From: Pelomyxa schiedti
Taxonomy: Eukaryota; Protista; Evosea
Length of the DNA: 56,463 nucleotides
NCBI GenBank assembly: GCA_020536535.1
Contig: JAHLWZ010000213.1
Coordinates: 1-56,463, forward strand
Direction of reading: 5' to 3'
How positions within the stretch are numbered: the first letter of the stretch is position 1; the number at the start of each line of letters is the position of its first letter. Of this stretch, positions 19,325-55,506 are shown piece by piece. The notes below the pieces were generated by a model. The model had not been told where the DNA came from. It made no database searches and was given only the letters and a program-made list of their open reading frames with translations. The position numbers and the translations under genes were made by a program.

Positions 19325-21421
19325 TCAATGTAATGCTTGTGCTGAATTTTGTTTTGGAGGCAAGTCTTCACTTTGGAACTTTTGGCATTCCAAATGTGCT
19401 CAACAACGAGTGATGAAATACTAACAACTAGGAAAATAGCCAGGAAAATAAACGGTCCTCCGAAATTTTTGACACTGTGAAAAGTTTTAGCTTGTCAATA
19501 AATTTGTTTGTTTAGGAGGATTACCTGAGGCTATTGAATGAGGTTTCATCTACACCACATGAACTTAATTCAACATACCACTTGTTGTACAAATCATCCA
19601 GGGTCCCGTCATCCTGCAACTCTAGTATAGCTTGGGAAAATGTGTCCCTCAGAGGAGAGCCTTTGGGAAAAGGTAGACCATAGAAAGTAGTTGCAAAGCT
19701 ATCTCCGACCTAGTGAGGGTTTGATTTCTGGGCCGAAGTTCTCAGAAATACCTCCATGACATTACATGGCGGTAGGCCAACAACATAGTCAAGAACTGCA
19801 GAAAAAATAAGAAAAGAAAGGACCTGTACGAAGACGCACTGGGTGTAGGGAAAACGAGGGCACAGACTTCCTGGAATAGGTTACGAGGTATGAAAAACAT
19901 TCGTCATACTTGGGCTTCCAGTGCTTGCATTGACTGAATCACATCAGGAAATTCAACCATATTTTGAAGGGCATCCTACCAATTCGTTACGATACCTGTC
20001 TTCCTGGTAACCTTATACCCTATTTTCTTGAAGGTGAAAGTAATAGCAACCAGCAGAGCCATTCATCACTGCAAACGGTAGCCTTTACTAACTTAGAGTA
20101 CTCTTTCTTCATTTTACTTACTCGTTTGTTTTCAGGTCGTCTATTGTCTCTATATCTGTTTTAAGTTTTGTGACTGTCATCATTGACGCTAAGTTCGCTG
20201 TGTATGACTGCAGTATATGCATTCCAGATGAGAAATCTTAGAAGGTGCTGGCCACTTACCGAAACAATGATCAAACTGTATAGGGAAGGAGGAAAAAAGT
20301 TTTGTGAGATGTTGACGTGATTCATGCCTTCCTTACGAAAAAAAAATGAAGCCAAACATCAAAACTCTTGTTGAGAAGCTTTTACCTTTCAGAGCTTTTA
20401 GCCCAACTGCTACTTCAAGTGAGTTTGTCTGGTGACAATGTGTGAGTGCGAGACAGGAGAAACAGTGCCGTACCAAACTGCGTTCAGCATCCCAGAGATG
20501 TCTTTCATTTGGGTTTTTCGAATGATGATACCCTGTCAAGTGTTTCAAAATCGCGCAAGGTCACTAGTATCAACCATAGGGTGACATCCAGTCAATAAAG
20601 AAGGCTGAAATGGCAACCACACATGTTGCAGTGATGATCAGAAACCACAAGGATACGTCGAAGGGAAGGAGAAACGAAAATAGGTCCAGGGACTCGTCTT
20701 TTAGCACTAAAATCTTGAGGTGTCAGTTTCGTTGCAATCCAACACACTGTGGAATTCTTTATACCCTAAGTGAAGAAGGGAAAAGCGGGAAAGTGAAGTC
20801 AATAACAGTATTCTGCTCAGCAGTAGCATGCATTGGTACGAATCCAATATCAGCACGCCCGTACATCAACTCACCAACCATGCCAGTCCATACACCATTG
20901 ACTGAAAGGAATTTGAGTGGGAAATTAATGCCAAGGCTCCACACTATTCTGTCCATACTGGCTATCAATAGTTTCGTAAATCTCTACTCTGCAAGTACAA
21001 GTTTAAGCCATATTCAAAAAGGAACCAAACACTCAAATAAAAACCTACGAGAGGTTGTAGTCACTGAGCTTGATCAGAATTGCATCCATTACATCACAAC
21101 TATATCCATAGTACATATCTTCCCCCGATTTCGAAGAATCAACATAGAGCAACGGTGCCTTTTCGCCATTAGAATACCAGCCGGAACAACACCCAAACAA
21201 ACAAACAACAAAAACAAAGACACCACCCCACATCCAGGATCCAGAAACCGAAATTACAACCAAAAGGCCCACAACCAATCCCATGCCTCAATCACTGCCA
21301 CAGCCCTGAGGACGCAGTCCTGCGTGCACTGACCAAAACCATAGCGAACCAAGCCAGACCAAGCCACCATCAAGCCGACCAACCACCTCTTGGGTCTAAC
21401 TCCTGTTCCTGGCTCCAACAT
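19325..21421 (-). CDS. Ionotropic glutamate receptor (iGluR/GLR)-like ion channel, multi-exon, no amino-terminal domain
   Basis: S1 YGYSCDV...WTGMVGELMYGRADIG...IDFTFP; M1 FLLPFDVSLWFLI; M3 IIVS|SYTANLASMMTV (20187-20207); S2 PPC...YGLPFPKGSPLRD...LQDDGTLDDLYNKW; M4 NFGGPFIFL...VVEH. Confidence 0.92.
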
Positions 21422-33169: not shown

Positions 33170-35317
33170 TCAGTGTCTCTTTTGTATTGTCCATCCAACG
33201 GCTGACGATGTGGTTGTTGTTGTTGACACCATTGTTGCTTTGGGTGGGTTTTGTGCTTTTGGTCCTTTGCTGGGTGCACAGGGAGTGGAAAACATGGAAG
33301 GTGTACATAGCTGTGGTGGTTGCGTGCGGGTCCTGTTGTTATTGGATGATCCTATTGCGGGGAGAACAACCTTGGCTGAGGTGGGTGGGGACACAGGGTT
33401 GACCGGCTGTGGCGGCGGTGGTTGTGACCTGGGGTTGGAGTTTGGGTTTGGGGTGACTGGTGGGCTGGGTTTTGTTGTTTCAAAAACTGATAGCTGGGTA
33501 ATGCCGGTGGTTACTGAACTGACTGGCTTGGAGGCTGCTGGATCAGTGGACCAAGATTGCTTGAGGTACGCAGCAAGTTCATCTGCAAGGGGGTCACTCT
33601 GATCATTCAAGATTTTTTCAGCTTCGGCAATGGCTGCTTTGATACCAGTTCCAACAGCTGCATACAGTCAAAGAGGGAGAAAATTTCAGACAGACGGACC
33701 ACGAGCATCTGAGAATGCACAGTGGAAAGGCTTCCGTCCAGACAAAAGTCCAGTGTGGTATTCACATCTACACAAAGTGTTTGATGGAAATAATTACGTT
33801 TTCTGCTGGAAAGACACACTTTGGTGCAATGCCACACTCACAATCAAAGAATACGTCTATTTTGTGGGCAATCTCCTCTTGCTTGATATGACACTTACGG
33901 TGGTTCAGGATACTATAGACACCATCACACATTTCAAAAACTTGAGCAGAGAGGCAATCGATTACACCTTTTTTTTAAAAAAAAATATTAGAACGTTTCA
34001 AACTGTGGTGCATCGAACCGGCTTTCTCTGCAAGCCAAGAAATGCATTTCCTAAGTACATGTAAATCTAAATATTAGTAATGGAGTATAAATCACTTTTC
34101 AGTAGCGCAGCCCTACATAAATTTTGAATAAATCGTAATTGTTGGGCATAGTTGGTACCTTTGAAAACAAAATTGGCCTATGTGGTCCTGATGTTGGGAT
34201 GTATCTGCTTAAAAACTCAAGAAGTGCGTTCCATATGTCCCGGTAATTTCCGTTTGCCCTCCTTCGAGTGTTAAGGAAACACATAAATACACATCATACT
34301 TGCAATCCAGAGGTATGCCATGGTGGTTCAACACCAATTCTTGAACAGTGGGCATATTTCTAGGTTCCAAACTGACATAAGTAGAAAAGGTCAACGCATC
34401 ACGTACTGTGGAGGTATTGGACCAGGGTTGATAATTGCATGAAACCCATCCATCTCAAAAGCTGAAAGGCAAAAAGCTCTAACCCCAATCTCGTTTGGGT
34501 AATGTTGCCCTCCTTTCCCAATACAAGCACACTCGAAATCTATTCCAAAGAACACATGATTTTTGATATCTGAGGGAGATGAATGTCAGGACTTTCAGAA
34601 GGGATGACGCACCTTGAATGGTTTGTATCTGGAGGGTAAGTTCATTGGGAGTGACATGTGGCACATAAGGTGGTGCAACTTTTTGATTTGGGGGCTTTGT
34701 AGTAGGTTCATCATCTTCATCACTTTCTTCTGTAGGCTGGTTCTTCAACTTTCCTTTTCTTTTTTGTGCTTCAAATTCCGCAATAGCCTGGCGTCGTTTC
34801 TTTTTTTTGGTGGAAACGAACATGTAGTCAAACTCTGTTGATGTGGGTGCTCTGGCCTAATATTAGAAGATTAGTTACACCAAATAAAGATCAAAACAAG
34901 GCCTGTACCTCTTGGATAAACTGAGAGAGAAAACATTTGCCTTGAAGAGTTCGAATAGCAATTGGTATTTGGTCGACGGTCTGTGAGAGAGGAAAATTAG
35001 TGATGAAGGACCCTCATTTCTTGGGGCGCACATTGAACACAAGCTGCATGATTCCAATGAATCCACCGAAGCTGGCATAAGCGAAGGCGAAATTTTTTGC
35101 TTAACAGGTGACATACCGCGGCCCAGCCAAGCGACCTTCCGCCTTTTTCAAAAGCTATCATTGCCCTAGCCGGCGCCAGTCCCAGCGACGCAACAAAGTC
35201 CCGCAAATCAGCATTTGTGATGCCCCCAGGGATCGGCCTTACAATGATCACGCGCGACTGCTTCCCCCTCGACGCGGCAGTAGGAACAAACTCCGCCACC
35301 TCCGCCGCGCACTTCAT
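33170..35317 (-). CDS. MAEL: RRM plus Maelstrom (DEDDh-fold) domain protein with Pro-rich tail, multi-exon
   Basis: Spliced motifs FFGIDFECAC...YPNEIG, FHAIINPGPIP, NHHGIPL, NYRDIWNALLEFL, FSKGCATEKKCISWL, GIAPKCEYH...HCAFSDAR; N-terminal RRM GRSLGWAA|LVFN|TVDQIPIAIRTLQG. Confidence 0.82.
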
Positions 35318-41384: not shown

Positions 41385-41457
41385 CGGGCGCGCTGGGGAT
41401 TGAACCCAGGACCAACTGCTCCGCAAGCAGCCATTCTTCCAACTGAACTACACGCCC
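41385..41457 (-). tRNA. trnR-GCG: tRNA-Arg(GCG)
   Basis: GGGCGTG/CGCGCCC acceptor, GCTGC-TTGCGGA-GCAGT anticodon arm, A20, G73, GGTTCAATCC, oligo-T terminator. Confidence 0.92.
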
Positions 41458-53673: not shown

Positions 53674-55506
53674 TCACAGCTTGTCGAGCCTTTCAACAAA
53701 CGGTGCCAAGTCCTTTCTTGCCGCGGCCATAATTTGGGGTGCAAAGAATTCCCACAGGAAATGCTCAAACTTGGGCCTCAGCTGGTTCTCGGCATAGTTA
53801 CGCAGCCATTCTGTGTATTTCGGCACGTTCTTATCTGAGTGGCTCTCCACTGTGACATTACGGACGGCTTCTTCCCAGAGCTCCGGGGTGGAGTATTTCT
53901 TGGCCTCCTCGAATATAGCGGTCCGGCCGGCGGAATCCATGGTTTCTGCTCTCTTCGTGGCCGGCTGTGCTGTCTCGATGTCGGCTCTTACTTTGTTGTA
54001 TGCTTCGATTTGCTCTGGTGTCAGGTATTTGTTTACGTACCATTTCCCCAACCCCGCGGTGAGTCCAGGAAGCATGTAGGTCTTTAGGTCACCCCACAGA
54101 TAGCACATGATCTCCTCGGTGGCTTCTTTCTTTAGATCAGCATCAAGCTCTTCAGATAGTCCCACAATGTCTCTACTCTTCTCTGGGAACCCCTGCTCTT
54201 GTAAGTGCTGCACTGCTTTCCTGAATCTTGCTTCCACATTCCACATATTTCCAATAGTGTCCACTATGCCTTCTACAGTTAGTGTTTGGACGGTGGCGTG
54301 GTCGACTCCCCTATTGTGCTTCTCTTTGAATTTGGAAGCAAGAACCTTGCTGATGCGGGGAGGAGCATCCTTTACATTCGGAGGAATGTCGAACAGCTTT
54401 ATGACATATCCCTCGACATCAGTGCCCCCAAGGCAGGAAGTAATCTTCCCCTCATTGATGAACCTCTCACACACCACGTGCGGGTCGTCATTGCCCTCAG
54501 AGGGAGCGTTGTGCACAAACACAGTCTGCACACATTCCAGGCCGATTCTCCCAGATTCCTGCGCCAGTTCGTCCGGAGTGAAATAGCGGCCTCCAGTGAC
54601 ATTCTTGGAGTAAGCTTCGTACGCGGCGCCGGACTGTCCCACAGAGTCCGGGCAGAATATGTCGTACAGGATGACATATCTCTTTGGCCGCCTTTCGTAC
54701 ACACTCACGTTGTGGATTGGCTTGCCGAGGTACTCGCCGTGGTATATGAGCCCTGGGCTCAGCAAGTGCTTTATTCCCTCGAGGGCGTGGACCGCGTTGA
54801 GAAACATTGGGTTGGAGGCCAGGTCCTTCCCATGATTGTCGAACACCAGGCTCGATTGGCCGCCGCTAACAGCGGAATCCGCGGCTGCGACGGAGGAAGT
54901 GGGAGTCGAACTGGAAGCGGCACTGGCACTGACGTCGGAAGGAGGTAATTCTGAAGAAGCAGAAGTTGTTGATGATGTTGGTGTTGATGCAGAGGGAGAG
55001 GAAGGGGAGGAGGGCGGAATTATGGGAGCGGGAGTGGGAGTGGGAGGATTTACCCTGACGGCGAAAGTGAGCTGGCTGCCGTCAATTTTTTCCTGGACGT
55101 ACCATTTGGTGTCCGCGGGCCATTTTGCAGCGCTCTTGGGCCCGAGGACTGAGAAAGACGGGTAGGCGATCTTGTTACCCCCCGTCGCCACGATATTATG
55201 GGAGCCACCCGGGGCCTTGGGACCGGGGTTTGCCCCGCCACCCCTGTTGCCTTTTGCGGCAGTTGCCTTCTTACCGGGCGTATCAACACCCTTTTCGGTC
55301 GCAGTCGTAGTAGCAGTCGTCGAAGCAGACGAGGTGGTTGGTGGTGACGTCACGTCGACAACTGCCACCCCCGTGGAGGTGCTACTGGGTTTTTCAGGGA
55401 CAACAACAGCACTGACAGGGGGCTGTGCAGTTGCTGAGGTGTCGTCATCGTGGGATGGTGCTGGCGTGGTGGTCGTTGCTGTCGCCGCTGGCTTATTCTC
55501 GTCCAT
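53674..55506 (-). CDS. ATP-dependent RNA ligase, Rnl2-like (phage/giant-virus type), intronless
   Basis: Nucleotidyltransferase motifs I QEKIDGSQ, III YHGEY, IIIa ILYDI, IV EGYVIK, V SKVLASKFKE, then helical domain EARFRKAVQHL. Confidence 0.85.
   Translation of the reverse strand: MDENKPAATATTTTPAPSHDDDTSATAQPPVSAVVVPEKPSSTSTGVAVVDVTSPPTTSSASTTATTTATEKGVDTPGKKATAAKGNRGGGANPGPKAPGGSHNIVATGGNKIAYPSFSVLGPKSAAKWPADTKWYVQEKIDGSQLTFAVRVNPPTPTPAPIIPPSSPSSPSASTPTSSTTSASSELPPSDVSASAASSSTPTSSVAAADSAVSGGQSSLVFDNHGKDLASNPMFLNAVHALEGIKHLLSPGLIYHGEYLGKPIHNVSVYERRPKRYVILYDIFCPDSVGQSGAAYEAYSKNVTGGRYFTPDELAQESGRIGLECVQTVFVHNAPSEGNDDPHVVCERFINEGKITSCLGGTDVEGYVIKLFDIPPNVKDAPPRISKVLASKFKEKHNRGVDHATVQTLTVEGIVDTIGNMWNVEARFRKAVQHLQEQGFPEKSRDIVGLSEELDADLKKEATEEIMCYLWGDLKTYMLPGLTAGLGKWYVNKYLTPEQIEAYNKVRADIETAQPATKRAETMDSAGRTAIFEEAKKYSTPELWEEAVRNVTVESHSDKNVPKYTEWLRNYAENQLRPKFEHFLWEFFAPQIMAAARKDLAPFVERLDKL

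What the first reader, a model, noticed from the sequence alone, without database searches (positions are those of the whole stretch)
33170..35317. RRM-Maelstrom fusion that keeps both the DEDDh nuclease site and the ECHC zinc site
Seen: hidden across many small exons are IDFE (34532-34543), YPNEIG, INPGPIP, HHGIP, KGCATE (Glu at the middle acidic position), CEYH (33755-33766) and HCAFSD (33707-33724, the HxAxxD ExoIII motif). Established: animal Maelstrom is a piRNA-pathway factor with an N-terminal HMG box that has lost the DEDD residues, while protist MAEL such as Entamoeba's retains them and is an exonuclease. Here an RRM and a basic NLS-like linker take the place of the HMG box. Inference: an active RNA-guided or RNA-binding 3'-5' nuclease of an uncharacterised small-RNA or transposon-silencing pathway in this amoeba.
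Basis: partly seen in the sequence, partly recalled or inferred. Interest (0 to 1): 0.8.

Follow-up and report, generated by a model that had tools for sequence, protein, structure and literature searches.

The report
RRM-Maelstrom exonuclease gene in Pelomyxa
This is a real, spliced and transcribed amoeba gene that joins an RNA-binding RRM module to a Maelstrom-type nuclease domain with all its cutting residues intact. The nuclease type is already known from Entamoeba and trypanosomes, and the RRM fusion proves common among protists although no paper found here describes it.

Summary
A 12-exon GT-AG gene lies on the minus strand (35317..33170) and encodes 535 aa. It is identical to NCBI KAH3765452.1, "hypothetical protein Pelo_2695" of Pelomyxa schiedti. 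RNA contigs from three single-cell transcriptomes join the exons in frame. They include a 17-nt micro-exon that carries catalytic Glu290.

The full-length protein scores above Pfam's cut-off for Maelstrom (48.4 bits). It has all five DEDDh residues (D187, E189, E290, H366, D371) and the EHHCHC/ECHC set (E203, H220, H244, C352, H355, C367). The AlphaFold model (pLDDT 94) matches solved Maelstrom domains best (Z 19-20), ahead of ordinary DEDDh exonucleases (Z 15 or less). Residues 19-100 fold as an RRM.

Protist MAEL domains with both DEDD and ECHC are published and shown to be active (EhMael, TbRIF4). RRM-MAEL is not unique to this amoeba. It recurs in Amoebozoa and Discoba, and in at least one Pelomyxa paralogue that has lost DEDDh. 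This scan had already noted two other RRM-Maelstrom fusions on other pieces of this genome.

The most likely function is a Mg/Mn-dependent 3'-5' exoribonuclease in a small-RNA pathway, by analogy with TbRIF4. Nothing supports "RNA-guided". Interest is moderate.

The parts
33170..35317 (-). Whole coding region of Pelo_2695 (KAH3765452.1). It has 12 exons and encodes 535 aa. An in-frame TGA lies two codons upstream of the ATG.
   Evidence: model. (RNA contigs). (identical to P0001).
35117..35317 (-). Exon 1 (aa 1-67). It holds RRM strand beta1, helix alpha1, strand beta2 and the start of the RNP1 strand (LGWAA).
   Evidence: X1 contig covers 35117-35403..
35032..35043 (-). 12-nt micro-exon (aa 68-71, LVFN) that completes the RNP1 strand of the RRM.
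   Evidence: 17-letter loose end of one X1 contig reads micro-exon plus the first 5 nt of the next exon. (AG/GT borders). It is present in the NCBI model P0001.
34909..34980 (-). Exon 3 (aa 72-95). It holds RRM helix alpha2 and strand beta4.
   Evidence: joint 34856/34909..
34613..34856 (-). Exon 4 (aa 96-177). It holds a conserved helix after the RRM (TEFDYMFV), basic KKKKRRQ and KRKGK stretches, an acidic patch and a Pro-rich linker.
   Evidence: joints. (the post-RRM extension is conserved in relatives). (helix predicted)..
34407..34569 (-). Exon 5 (aa 177-231), the MAEL N-terminal strands. It carries D187 and E189 (IDFE), the zinc ligand E203 (PNE), H220 and the NPGPIP motif.
   Evidence: this exon alone gives PF13017 at 16.7 bits..
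34300..34359 (-). Exon 6 (aa 231-251). It carries H244 (HHGIP).
   Evidence: joints 34359/34407 and 34261/34300..
34159..34261 (-). Exon 7 (aa 251-285). It holds a MAEL helix and the strand ending in LFSK.
34096..34112 (-). 17-nt micro-exon (GCATE-K) that carries E290, the middle acidic residue of the DEDDh set.
   Evidence: table 5c (16 letters between joints 34050 and 34158 in X1, X2 and X3)..
34019..34050 (-). Exon 9 (aa 291-302), the conserved C-x-W-L-A helix.
   Evidence: joint 33967/34019 corrected my first model..
33820..33967 (-). Exon 10 (aa 302-351), the variable helical middle of the MAEL domain.
33700..33767 (-). Exon 11 (aa 351-374). It carries zinc ligands C352 and H355 (CEYH), catalytic H366, zinc ligand C367 and catalytic D371 (HCAFSD).
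33170..33657 (-). Exon 12 (aa 374-535). It holds the last MAEL helix and then a low-complexity tail of about 140 aa rich in Pro, Ser and Thr. A Q452L difference (33422-33423) appears in two RNA contigs.
   Evidence: table 3..

Best explanation
The gene encodes a two-module RNA enzyme. The N-terminal module is an RRM (aa ~19-100) followed by a conserved short helix and a charged linker. The C-terminal module is a Maelstrom-type (MAEL) RNase-H-fold domain (aa ~175-395). Shown here: the gene is spliced and transcribed. The domain belongs to the MAEL family by sequence and by fold. It keeps the zinc-ligand tetrad E203/C352/H355/C367, the two extra family histidines H220 and H244, and a complete DEDDh metal and general-base set D187/E189/E290/H366/D371. 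Inferred from the characterised relatives EhMael and TbRIF4: it is a Mg2+/Mn2+-dependent 3'-5' exoribonuclease whose fold is held together by a structural zinc. Further inferred: the RRM holds or selects the RNA, or a partner, in cis so that a free 3' end reaches the active site. The enzyme would then work in the amoeba's Argonaute/RdRP/Dicer-type small-RNA machinery, for example by trimming or removing one strand of siRNA duplexes as TbRIF4 does. My odds are about 0.95 for the architecture and intact sites, about 0.75 for exonuclease activity, and about 0.45 for a small-RNA pathway role. The stated confidence is for the whole chain.
For: Gene and splicing: with identity to KAH3765452.1. MAEL membership: PF13017 at 48.4 bits, E 1.2e-12, cut-off 22, with no RNase_T hit. 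A profile of 21 DEDDh-type protist domains, none from an HMG-box protein, hits Drosophila MAEL 4ybg at E 1.4e-13 against PolC exonuclease at 2.1e-5. AF2 model: pLDDT 94.1. Foldseek's top 8 matches are all Maelstrom, TM 0.71-0.74. VIA-align gives Z 19.9 for 4ybg against 15.0 or less for DnaQ, ERI1 and RNase T. Catalytic set: 22 of 72 representatives keep 5 of 5 and none keeps 4 of 5; the middle residue is Glu in 18 of the 22. RRM: Pfam RRM_1 covers positions 1-69 of 70 at 18.4 bits, and relatives score above the cut-off (P0008 37.6, P0006 23.7, P0027 22.4, P0059 21.0 bits). The model has beta-alpha-beta-beta-alpha-beta topology, pLDDT 87, and all top PDB matches are RRMs. Pathway context: at least 4 Piwi-domain loci lie in the same genome, and earlier scan notes record RdRP and Dicer-type helicase genes. 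One metagenomic relative fuses PAZ, two RNase III domains and a DEDDh MAEL in a single ORF. Literature: EhMael is an active exoribonuclease (PMC4408791). TbRIF4 is a MAEL-type DEDDh enzyme that converts duplex siRNA to single strands and associates with AGO1 (PMC3359990, PMC2628886).
Against: No activity, metal or RNA-binding data exist for this protein. Only one of the three canonical RNA-stacking aromatic positions of an RRM is kept (W65; RNP1 position 5 is Ala, RNP2 position 2 is Ile), so the RRM could be a protein-binding module. Pfam RRM_1 is just below its cut-off for this protein. The link to small RNAs rests on analogy, on one fusion protein from an unknown organism, and on the mere presence of Argonaute genes. 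A single-sequence search of the domain against PDB finds nothing, so all homology is at profile or fold level. The RNA evidence comes from one study and one sample, held as contigs.
Confidence: 0.55

Rival explanations
1. It is an active RRM-tethered 3'-5' exoribonuclease that serves general RNA metabolism, such as 3'-end trimming of rRNA, snRNA or tRNA, or mRNA decay. It would have no role in Argonaute-based silencing.
For: All structural evidence for an active nuclease fits this reading equally well. RRM-plus-DEDD exonuclease combinations exist in general RNA processing; that statement is from my own knowledge and was not tested here. The top RRM fold matches are CstF-64 and RBM7, which are 3'-end and exosome-targeting factors, but fold rank does not show function.
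Against: The two functionally studied family branches both connect to small-RNA pathways: TbRIF4 in RNAi (PMC3359990) and animal Maelstrom with PIWI (PDB 9nhc and 9nhs). A relative fuses the domain to a Dicer-like PAZ-RNase III core.
Confidence: 0.3
2. It is a catalytically silent RNA- or protein-binding MAEL protein, as in animals, and the DEDDh residues are retained only by descent.
For: Animal MAEL domains bind ssRNA without DEDD (PMC4408791). Inactive paralogues arise repeatedly in this family. One is the sister copy on contig C751 (P0007) and another is a copy in Acrasis.
Against: Where the nuclease function is given up, the five positions decay together: 49 of 72 representatives keep 2 or fewer and none keeps 4. 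This protein keeps all five in the family's invariant contexts IDFE and HCAxxD.
Confidence: 0.08
3. It is an ordinary DEDDh exonuclease of the ERI1, REX, RNase T or CAF1 kind that only resembles Maelstrom by chance motifs.
For: The fold is shared, with Z 12-15 to DnaQ, 3'hExo and RNase T. The DEDDh-type profile still detects a PolC exonuclease at E 2e-5.
Against: PF13017 scores above its cut-off and no RNase_T match appears at E<=1. Maelstrom structures outrank all other exonucleases by about 5 Z units and cover the whole domain. All six EHHCHC positions are present.
Confidence: 0.02
4. It is not a functional gene but a pseudogene or an assembly or annotation artefact.
For: The genome is a fragmented single-cell assembly (5337 contigs). 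The RNA support comes from a single study.
Against: The frame stays open across 12 exons with canonical splice sites. Spliced RNA contigs appear in three runs. An independent NCBI gene model is identical. The domain model has high confidence.
Confidence: 0.01

Closest known systems
EhMael (EHI_192630), MAEL-domain protein of Entamoeba histolytica (Chen et al. 2015, PMC4408791; Zhang et al. 2008, PMC2628886)
   Same: It is an archamoebal MAEL domain that carries both the DEDD(h) catalytic residues and the ECHC zinc motif. It was shown to be a Mg/Mn-dependent exoribonuclease. Entamoeba, like Pelomyxa, has both active-type and inactive-type paralogues.
   Different: No RRM is reported for it. I could not retrieve its sequence to compare directly. 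The one Entamoeba relative I did retrieve (P0105, 253 aa, E. nuttalli) is MAEL-only and of the inactive type. The Pelomyxa protein adds an N-terminal RRM, a charged linker and a 140-aa low-complexity tail.
TbRIF4, RNA interference factor 4 of Trypanosoma brucei (PMC3359990)
   Same: It is the T. brucei homologue that Zhang et al. found in their MAEL-domain survey, and its DEDDh residues are needed in vivo. It is a 3'-5' exonuclease acting on duplex siRNA and is found in a complex with AGO1. It has a non-catalytic N-terminal region followed by the C-terminal nuclease, as here.
   Different: Its middle acidic residue is Asp (D392), not Glu. No RRM is described in its N-terminal part. TbRIF4 was not identified among the named representatives, and most went unnamed, so the relation rests on the literature.
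Animal Maelstrom (Drosophila 4ybg, Bombyx 5af0; SIWI-piRNA-GTSF1-Maelstrom complexes 9nhc, 9nhd and 9nhs)
   Same: It is the best structural match (Z 18-20, rmsd 2.5-2.8 A over about 195-200 residues). It belongs to the same Pfam family and has the same ECHC zinc ligands.
   Different: Animals have an N-terminal HMG box instead of an RRM. They have lost the DEDD residues and are inactive as exonucleases (PMC4408791). Sequence identity is only 16-20%.
Arenavirus nucleoprotein exonuclease (Lassa NP, e.g. 3Q7V or 4GV9, as discussed in PMC4408791 and PMC7968707)
   Same: According to those papers it is the only solved domain type that combines an ECHC-type zinc site with an active DEDDh centre. 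That is the state predicted here.
   Different: It is a viral protein fused to a nucleocapsid domain. It did not appear among the 50 rows shown in my fold searches, so its closeness was not confirmed here.
Unnamed RRM-MAEL proteins of other protists
   Same: They share the same RRM, linker and MAEL order. Examples are Dermamoeba algensis P0027, Mastigella eilhardi P0059, Acrasis kona KAL0485435.1 (P0032), Arcella intermedia P0006 and metagenomic P0008. Several have the full DEDDh set. The RRM sub-type is the same, with an RNP1 motif of [KL]-G-[WFY]-A-[AG]-x-x-F and a conserved extension after beta4.
   Different: They are only 20-33% identical to the Pelomyxa protein. Linker and tail lengths vary. 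None has been characterised or described in the papers I could search.

Membership tests
Maelstrom / MAEL domain (Pfam PF13017) | Profile match above the curated gathering score | tested here: met
   P0001 scores 48.4 bits, E 1.2e-12, cut-off 22, residues 198-372. Exon 5 alone gives 16.7 bits.
Maelstrom / MAEL domain (Pfam PF13017) | Conserved EHHCHC residues, including the ECHC zinc tetrad | tested here: met
   E203, H220, H244, C352, H355 and C367 are all present. 64 of 72 representatives keep all six. The profile alignment places the Glu and C-x2-H...C positions of this subfamily on those of 4ybg, which I read as Drosophila E131, C288, H291 and C300; only E131 and H291 are confirmed by a paper read here (PMC4408791).
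Maelstrom / MAEL domain (Pfam PF13017) | MAEL variant of the RNase-H/DEDD fold, closer to solved MAEL domains than to other exonucleases | tested here: met
   Foldseek's top 8 are all Maelstrom, TM 0.71-0.74. VIA-align gives Z 19.9-18.1 against 15.0 or less for others. The model has pLDDT 94.1.
Maelstrom / MAEL domain (Pfam PF13017) | Bound structural Zn2+ | not testable with these tools
   The ligands are present. Metal occupancy needs ICP-MS, a crystal structure or a cryo-EM structure.
DEDDh (DnaQ-like) 3'-5' exonucleases | Five catalytic residues in the three Exo motifs (D-x-E; D or E; H-x4-D) | tested here: met
   D187, E189, E290, H366 and D371 are present. They co-vary as a block in the family, and the middle residue is Glu in 18 of the 22 complete sets.
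DEDDh (DnaQ-like) 3'-5' exonucleases | Match to the general exonuclease profile Pfam RNase_T (PF00929) | tested here: not met
   P0001 has no RNase_T match at E<=1. Only 4 of 92 relatives have a match at E<=0.01; the one itemised here (P0032) scores 21.2 bits, below the cut-off of 24. The relation is at superfamily and fold level.
DEDDh (DnaQ-like) 3'-5' exonucleases | Metal-dependent 3'-5' exonuclease activity | not testable with these tools
   Activity has been shown only for the relatives EhMael (PMC4408791) and TbRIF4 (PMC3359990).
RRM (Pfam PF00076, RRM_1) | Profile match above the gathering score | tested here: inconclusive
   P0001 scores 18.4 bits against a cut-off of 20.7, but covers profile positions 1-69 of 70. 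Relatives that align with it score above the cut-off: P0008 37.6, P0006 23.7, P0027 22.4 and P0059 21.0 bits.
RRM (Pfam PF00076, RRM_1) | beta1-alpha1-beta2-beta3-alpha2-beta4 fold | tested here: met
   The AF2 model has pLDDT 87.1 and that topology. All 50 rows shown by Foldseek are RRM domains, rmsd 1.6-2.3 A for the best.
RRM (Pfam PF00076, RRM_1) | Canonical RNP1 and RNP2 aromatic residues that stack on RNA | tested here: inconclusive
   RNP1 reads L-G-W-A-A-L-V-F (aa 63-70): W65 is kept, and position 5 is Ala. RNP2 reads I-I-V-R-P-I with no aromatic residue. Only one of the three stacking positions is retained, here and in most relatives.
Animal Maelstrom protein (piRNA factor: HMG box + inactive MAEL) | N-terminal HMG box | tested here: not met
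   P0001 has no HMG match. HMG boxes occur in 20 of the 92 representatives. Their place in the tree was not checked.
TbRIF4-like RNAi exonuclease | DEDDh-competent MAEL-type domain in an organism that has Argonaute | tested here: met
   The DEDDh set is complete. At least 4 Piwi-domain loci above the cut-off lie in the same genome.
TbRIF4-like RNAi exonuclease | Physical or functional coupling to Argonaute and siRNA duplexes | not testable with these tools
   This needs co-IP, small-RNA analysis or genetics. No Argonaute protein id was available for a complex prediction.

The most novel reading that the evidence does not exclude
RRM + DEDDh-active MAEL would be the ancestral eukaryotic form of Maelstrom. 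It would be a RIF4-like exonuclease that matures or loads small RNAs for Argonaute, and it would predate the split of Amoebozoa and Discoba. The animal HMG-MAEL piRNA factor would then be a derived version that swapped the RRM for an HMG box and lost catalysis. The repeated, independent pairs of an active and an inactivated RRM-MAEL paralogue (Pelomyxa C213/C751, Acrasis kona, Entamoeba) could work together as enzyme and pseudo-enzyme.
Probability: 0.25. Interest if true: 0.65.

Novelty: new variant of a known kind. Interest (0 to 1): 0.4.

Why it matters
Maelstrom is a long-studied but mechanistically puzzling piRNA factor. Its protist relatives are the only clue to what the domain originally did. 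This gene and its relatives show that in two eukaryotic supergroups the catalytically complete MAEL nuclease usually carries its own RRM. One lineage even fuses it to a Dicer-like core. That gives a concrete, testable picture of the ancestral enzyme as an RNA-tethered 3'-5' trimmer in small-RNA pathways. It also provides a set of natural active and inactive paralogue pairs for dissecting how a nuclease turns into an RNA-binding scaffold. For Pelomyxa itself, it gives a function to a "hypothetical protein". It is not a new kind of system.

Tried and rejected
1. My first hand-drawn 11-exon model was wrong at two acceptor or donor sites and missed the 12-nt micro-exon. The RNA contigs corrected it.

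2. Exon-by-exon Pfam scans gave almost nothing: only exon 5 scored, at 16.7 bits for Maelstrom, and no RRM appeared. Split domains are invisible in that kind of scan.

3. The word-index searches were nearly blind to this family. There were 0 hits with the C526 paralogue, 5 with the family profile and 1 with the DEDDh-type profile. These blanks say nothing about absence.

4. Single-sequence PDB searches with the C526 paralogue and with P0001's domain found no Maelstrom entry. Only profiles do.

5. MAFFT mis-placed short exon fragments in three of four attempts. Only alignment A2 was used for the large search.

6. I ran a complex prediction of the RRM against the MAEL domain as two chains. The verdict was "no answer", with score 0.00. 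This is neither support for nor evidence against a fixed docking.

7. The look-up of encoding contigs had no record for P0001, so I did not survey the neighbouring genes.

8. The MAEL-domain tree is poorly resolved (35 of 71 inner branches open). It cannot show a single origin of the RRM fusion.

9. I did not find the EhMael or TbRIF4 sequences among the retrieved proteins, so no direct identity figures can be given.

10. I rejected "RNA-guided nuclease" because no guide-binding module and no evidence for one was found.
Full report
**Method note**

I built the joined coding sequence only inside local scripts, to obtain coordinates and run local comparisons. Every full-length analysis used P0001, a public database protein that the large search returned and that proved identical to my model.

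**1. The observation**

The minus strand between 35317 and 33170 carries an ATG-to-TGA reading frame broken by short introns. My first hand model had 11 exons.

I laid Logan contigs of three single-cell RNA runs on the region. The runs come from one study and one sample, labelled "protist metagenome". The contigs showed joints at 33657/33700, 33767/33820, 33967/34019, 34261/34300, 34359/34407, 34569/34613 and 34856/34909. A 16-letter insert lay between 34050 and 34158, which is the 17-nt micro-exon 34112-34096. A 17-letter loose end at 35117 reads a 12-nt micro-exon (35043-35032) plus the start of the next exon.

The DNA run X4 holds the stretch unspliced in a single contig and may be the source of the assembly. 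The RNA moved two of my exon borders and added one exon.

The final model has 12 exons and 11 GT-AG introns of 38-73 nt. It spans 1608 nt and encodes 535 aa. An in-frame stop lies two codons upstream of the ATG.

**2. Identity of the gene**

I ran a profile search over 1.84 billion cluster representatives. The profile combined an intronless paralogue with two exons of this gene and one exon of another paralogue. It returned 92 proteins at E<=1e-3. The best hit, P0001, is 535 aa and letter-for-letter my model. It is NCBI KAH3765452.1, "hypothetical protein Pelo_2695 [Pelomyxa schiedti]", on a contig of 56,463 bases, which is the length of this window. The organism is therefore an archamoeba, a relative of Entamoeba. 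The genome paper is PMC8887013.

**3. The nuclease domain**

- **Pfam.** Full-length P0001 scores 48.4 bits (E 1.2e-12, cut-off 22) on Pfam Maelstrom. It has no match to RNase_T or other exonuclease families.
- **Family make-up.** Of the 92 representatives, 91 match Maelstrom.
- **Zinc-site residues.** I aligned all representatives to a domain HMM. The EHHCHC positions of Zhang et al. (PMC2628886) are nearly invariant; 64 of 72 representatives keep all six. In P0001 they are E203, H220, H244, C352, H355 and C367.
- **Catalytic residues.** The DEDDh positions behave as an all-or-none block. Twenty-two representatives keep 5 of 5, one keeps 3, forty-nine keep 2 or fewer, and none keeps 4. P0001 keeps all five: D187, E189, E290, H366 and D371.
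- **The middle residue.** It is in fact the norm in this class: Glu in 18 and Asp in 4 of the 22 complete sets. E290 is encoded by the 17-nt micro-exon, which is present in all three RNA runs.
- **Non-circular profile test.** I built a profile from 21 DEDDh-type protist domains only. It hits Drosophila MAEL (4ybg) at E 1.4e-13 and Bombyx MAEL at 6.6e-8. A PolC-type exonuclease scores 2.1e-5. The alignment places P-x-E and C-x2-H...C of the profile on the corresponding Drosophila positions.
- **Fold.** AlphaFold2 on aa 171-395 with a 74-sequence alignment gives pLDDT 94.1 and pTM 0.90. Foldseek's eight best PDB matches are all Maelstrom (TM 0.71-0.74). DnaQ, 3'hExo, RNase T and TREX follow at TM 0.49-0.59. 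VIA-align gives Z 19.9 (rmsd 2.7 A, 199 residues) for 4ybg, 19.2-18.1 for the Bombyx entries, and 15.0 or less for other exonucleases.

That criterion is tested and not met.

**4. The RRM**

Exon-wise Pfam scans saw nothing, because the domain is split over three exons. On the full protein, RRM_1 aligns end to end (profile positions 1-69 of 70, residues 24-93) at 18.4 bits, just below the cut-off of 20.7. Homologous N-termini of relatives score above the cut-off: P0008 37.6, P0006 23.7, P0027 22.4 and P0059 21.0 bits.

The AF2 model of aa 12-115 has pLDDT 87. It shows the beta-alpha-beta-beta-alpha-beta order plus a short C-terminal helix. All 50 rows that Foldseek shows are RRM domains; CstF-64, RBM7 and HuR lead, with rmsd 1.6-2.3 A. 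The fold is therefore an RRM.

RNA binding is less certain. RNP1 reads L-G-W-A-A-L-V-F and RNP2 reads I-I-V-R-P-I. Of the three classical stacking aromatic residues only W65 remains. This pattern is shared by the whole RRM-MAEL subfamily.

The linker holds a conserved helix (TEFDYMFV) and then KKKKRRQ and KRKGK. Reading it as an NLS is pattern-based only. The last ~140 aa form a low-complexity tail rich in Pro, Ser and Thr.

**5. How common the architecture is**

A family-specific RRM HMM finds an RRM directly upstream of the MAEL domain in 18 of the 92 representatives. Source names place them as follows:

- Amoebozoa: Pelomyxa (at least 2 genes), Mastigella, Arcella, Dermamoeba, Clastostelium and Rhizamoeba.
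- Discoba: Acrasis kona (2 genes), Willaertia, Euglena longa and Ploeotia.
- Metagenomes of unknown origin.

Many of the remaining protist representatives are fragments, so a missing RRM in those is uninformative.

Within the Pelomyxa genome, six-frame searches find MAEL loci on contigs C213 (this gene), C751, C277 and C526, and a weak one on C529.

- The C751 product (P0007, KAH3758650.1) has the same RRM and linker. It has lost DEDDh (A-x-E at the first motif, E-C-A-x-x-N at the last) while keeping ECHC.
- C526 is also of the inactive type.
- C277 keeps IDFE.

In the domain tree, P0001 and P0007 are sisters (SH-aLRT 84). The active and inactive Acrasis copies are also sisters (SH-aLRT 94). 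Otherwise the tree is poorly resolved. The first readers of this scan had already noted two other RRM-Maelstrom fusions on other pieces of this genome.

**6. What is already known**

Zhang et al. 2008 described protist MAEL domains that carry both DEDHD and EHHCHC, and lineage-specific duplicates that lose the former (PMC2628886). Chen et al. 2015 solved Bombyx MAEL, showed that ECHC binds a structural zinc, and showed that Entamoeba EhMael is a Mg/Mn-dependent exoribonuclease (PMC4408791).

Barnes et al. 2012 showed that TbRIF4 is a 3'-5' exonuclease. Its DEDDh motif had been noted by Zhang et al. It is required for RNAi, converts duplex siRNA to single strands, and is found with AGO1 (PMC3359990). 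So "keeps both sites" is the published protist condition.

[quoted passage not shown] I found no paper describing an RRM-MAEL fusion. The searchable library is not complete.

**7. Mechanism**

- **Shown:** a transcribed gene, the MAEL fold, complete catalytic and zinc-ligand sets, and an RRM fold in cis.
- **Inferred from characterised relatives:** two-metal 3'-5' exoribonuclease chemistry with H366 as general base, and a structural zinc held by E203, C352, H355 and C367.
- **Inferred from context:** a small-RNA role. The genome has at least four Piwi-domain loci, and earlier notes record RdRP and Dicer-type helicase genes. One metagenomic relative (P0057, 1315 aa) is a single ORF joining PAZ, two RNase III domains and a DEDDh MAEL domain. 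Solved structures also show animal Maelstrom sitting on a PIWI-piRNA-target complex (9nhc, 9nhd and 9nhs).

The main rival is a general RNA-processing exonuclease, which the structural data cannot separate from the small-RNA reading. A two-chain complex prediction of the RRM against the MAEL domain gave no answer. It counts neither way.

**8. Verdict**

This is a new, well-supported member of the known class of active protist MAEL nucleases. Its domain architecture, RRM-MAEL, appears undescribed in the papers searched but is widespread in sequence databases. I file it as a new variant of a known kind, with moderate interest (0.4).

Noticed in passing
P0057 (JGI metagenome contig of 4752 nt; not in the window): A single 1315-aa ORF joins a PAZ domain, two RNase III domains and a DEDDh-complete MAEL domain (aa ~808-1021). 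It is a Dicer-like/MAEL nuclease fusion and links the active MAEL nuclease to siRNA processing.
   Followed up: partly
window 34096-34112 and 35032-35043 (minus strand): Two micro-exons of 17 and 12 nt each encode a functionally critical piece: catalytic Glu290 and the end of the RRM RNP1 strand. Skipping the 17-nt exon would shift the reading frame. All three RNA runs include it.
   Followed up: partly
G000 contig C751 (L005; protein P0007 = KAH3758650.1), and Acrasis kona P0032/P0080: Sister paralogue pairs occur in which one RRM-MAEL copy keeps DEDDh and the other has lost it while keeping ECHC. They arose independently in Pelomyxa and Acrasis, as reported earlier for Entamoeba. They may be enzyme and pseudo-enzyme pairs.
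   Followed up: partly
window 33422-33423: RNA contigs of runs X1 and X2 read GA where the genome and run X3 read TT on the + strand. This gives Q452L (CAA to CTC) in the low-complexity tail. It may be an allele or cell-to-cell polymorphism.
   Followed up: partly
G000 contig C277 (L002 ~1000-1100): The C277 MAEL paralogue keeps IDFE and is probably the fusion noted as s1-611429. A run of N, flanked by a duplicated Pro-rich segment, interrupts it, so its 3' part cannot be read reliably.
   Followed up: no
P0001 aa 96-110 and alignment A7 columns 100-115: A conserved extension R-x-A-T-x-x-[DE]-x-x-[YW] follows strand beta4 of the RRM and is predicted as a helix. It recalls the C-terminal helix of the CstF-64 RRM, the top fold match, which covers the RNA-binding sheet. 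This could mean regulated RNA binding.
   Followed up: no
window 41385-41457, 19325-21421 and 53674-55506: Other first-reader notes exist on this window: a tRNA-Arg(GCG), an ATD-less iGluR homologue and an intronless Rnl2-type RNA ligase. I did not examine them.
   Followed up: no
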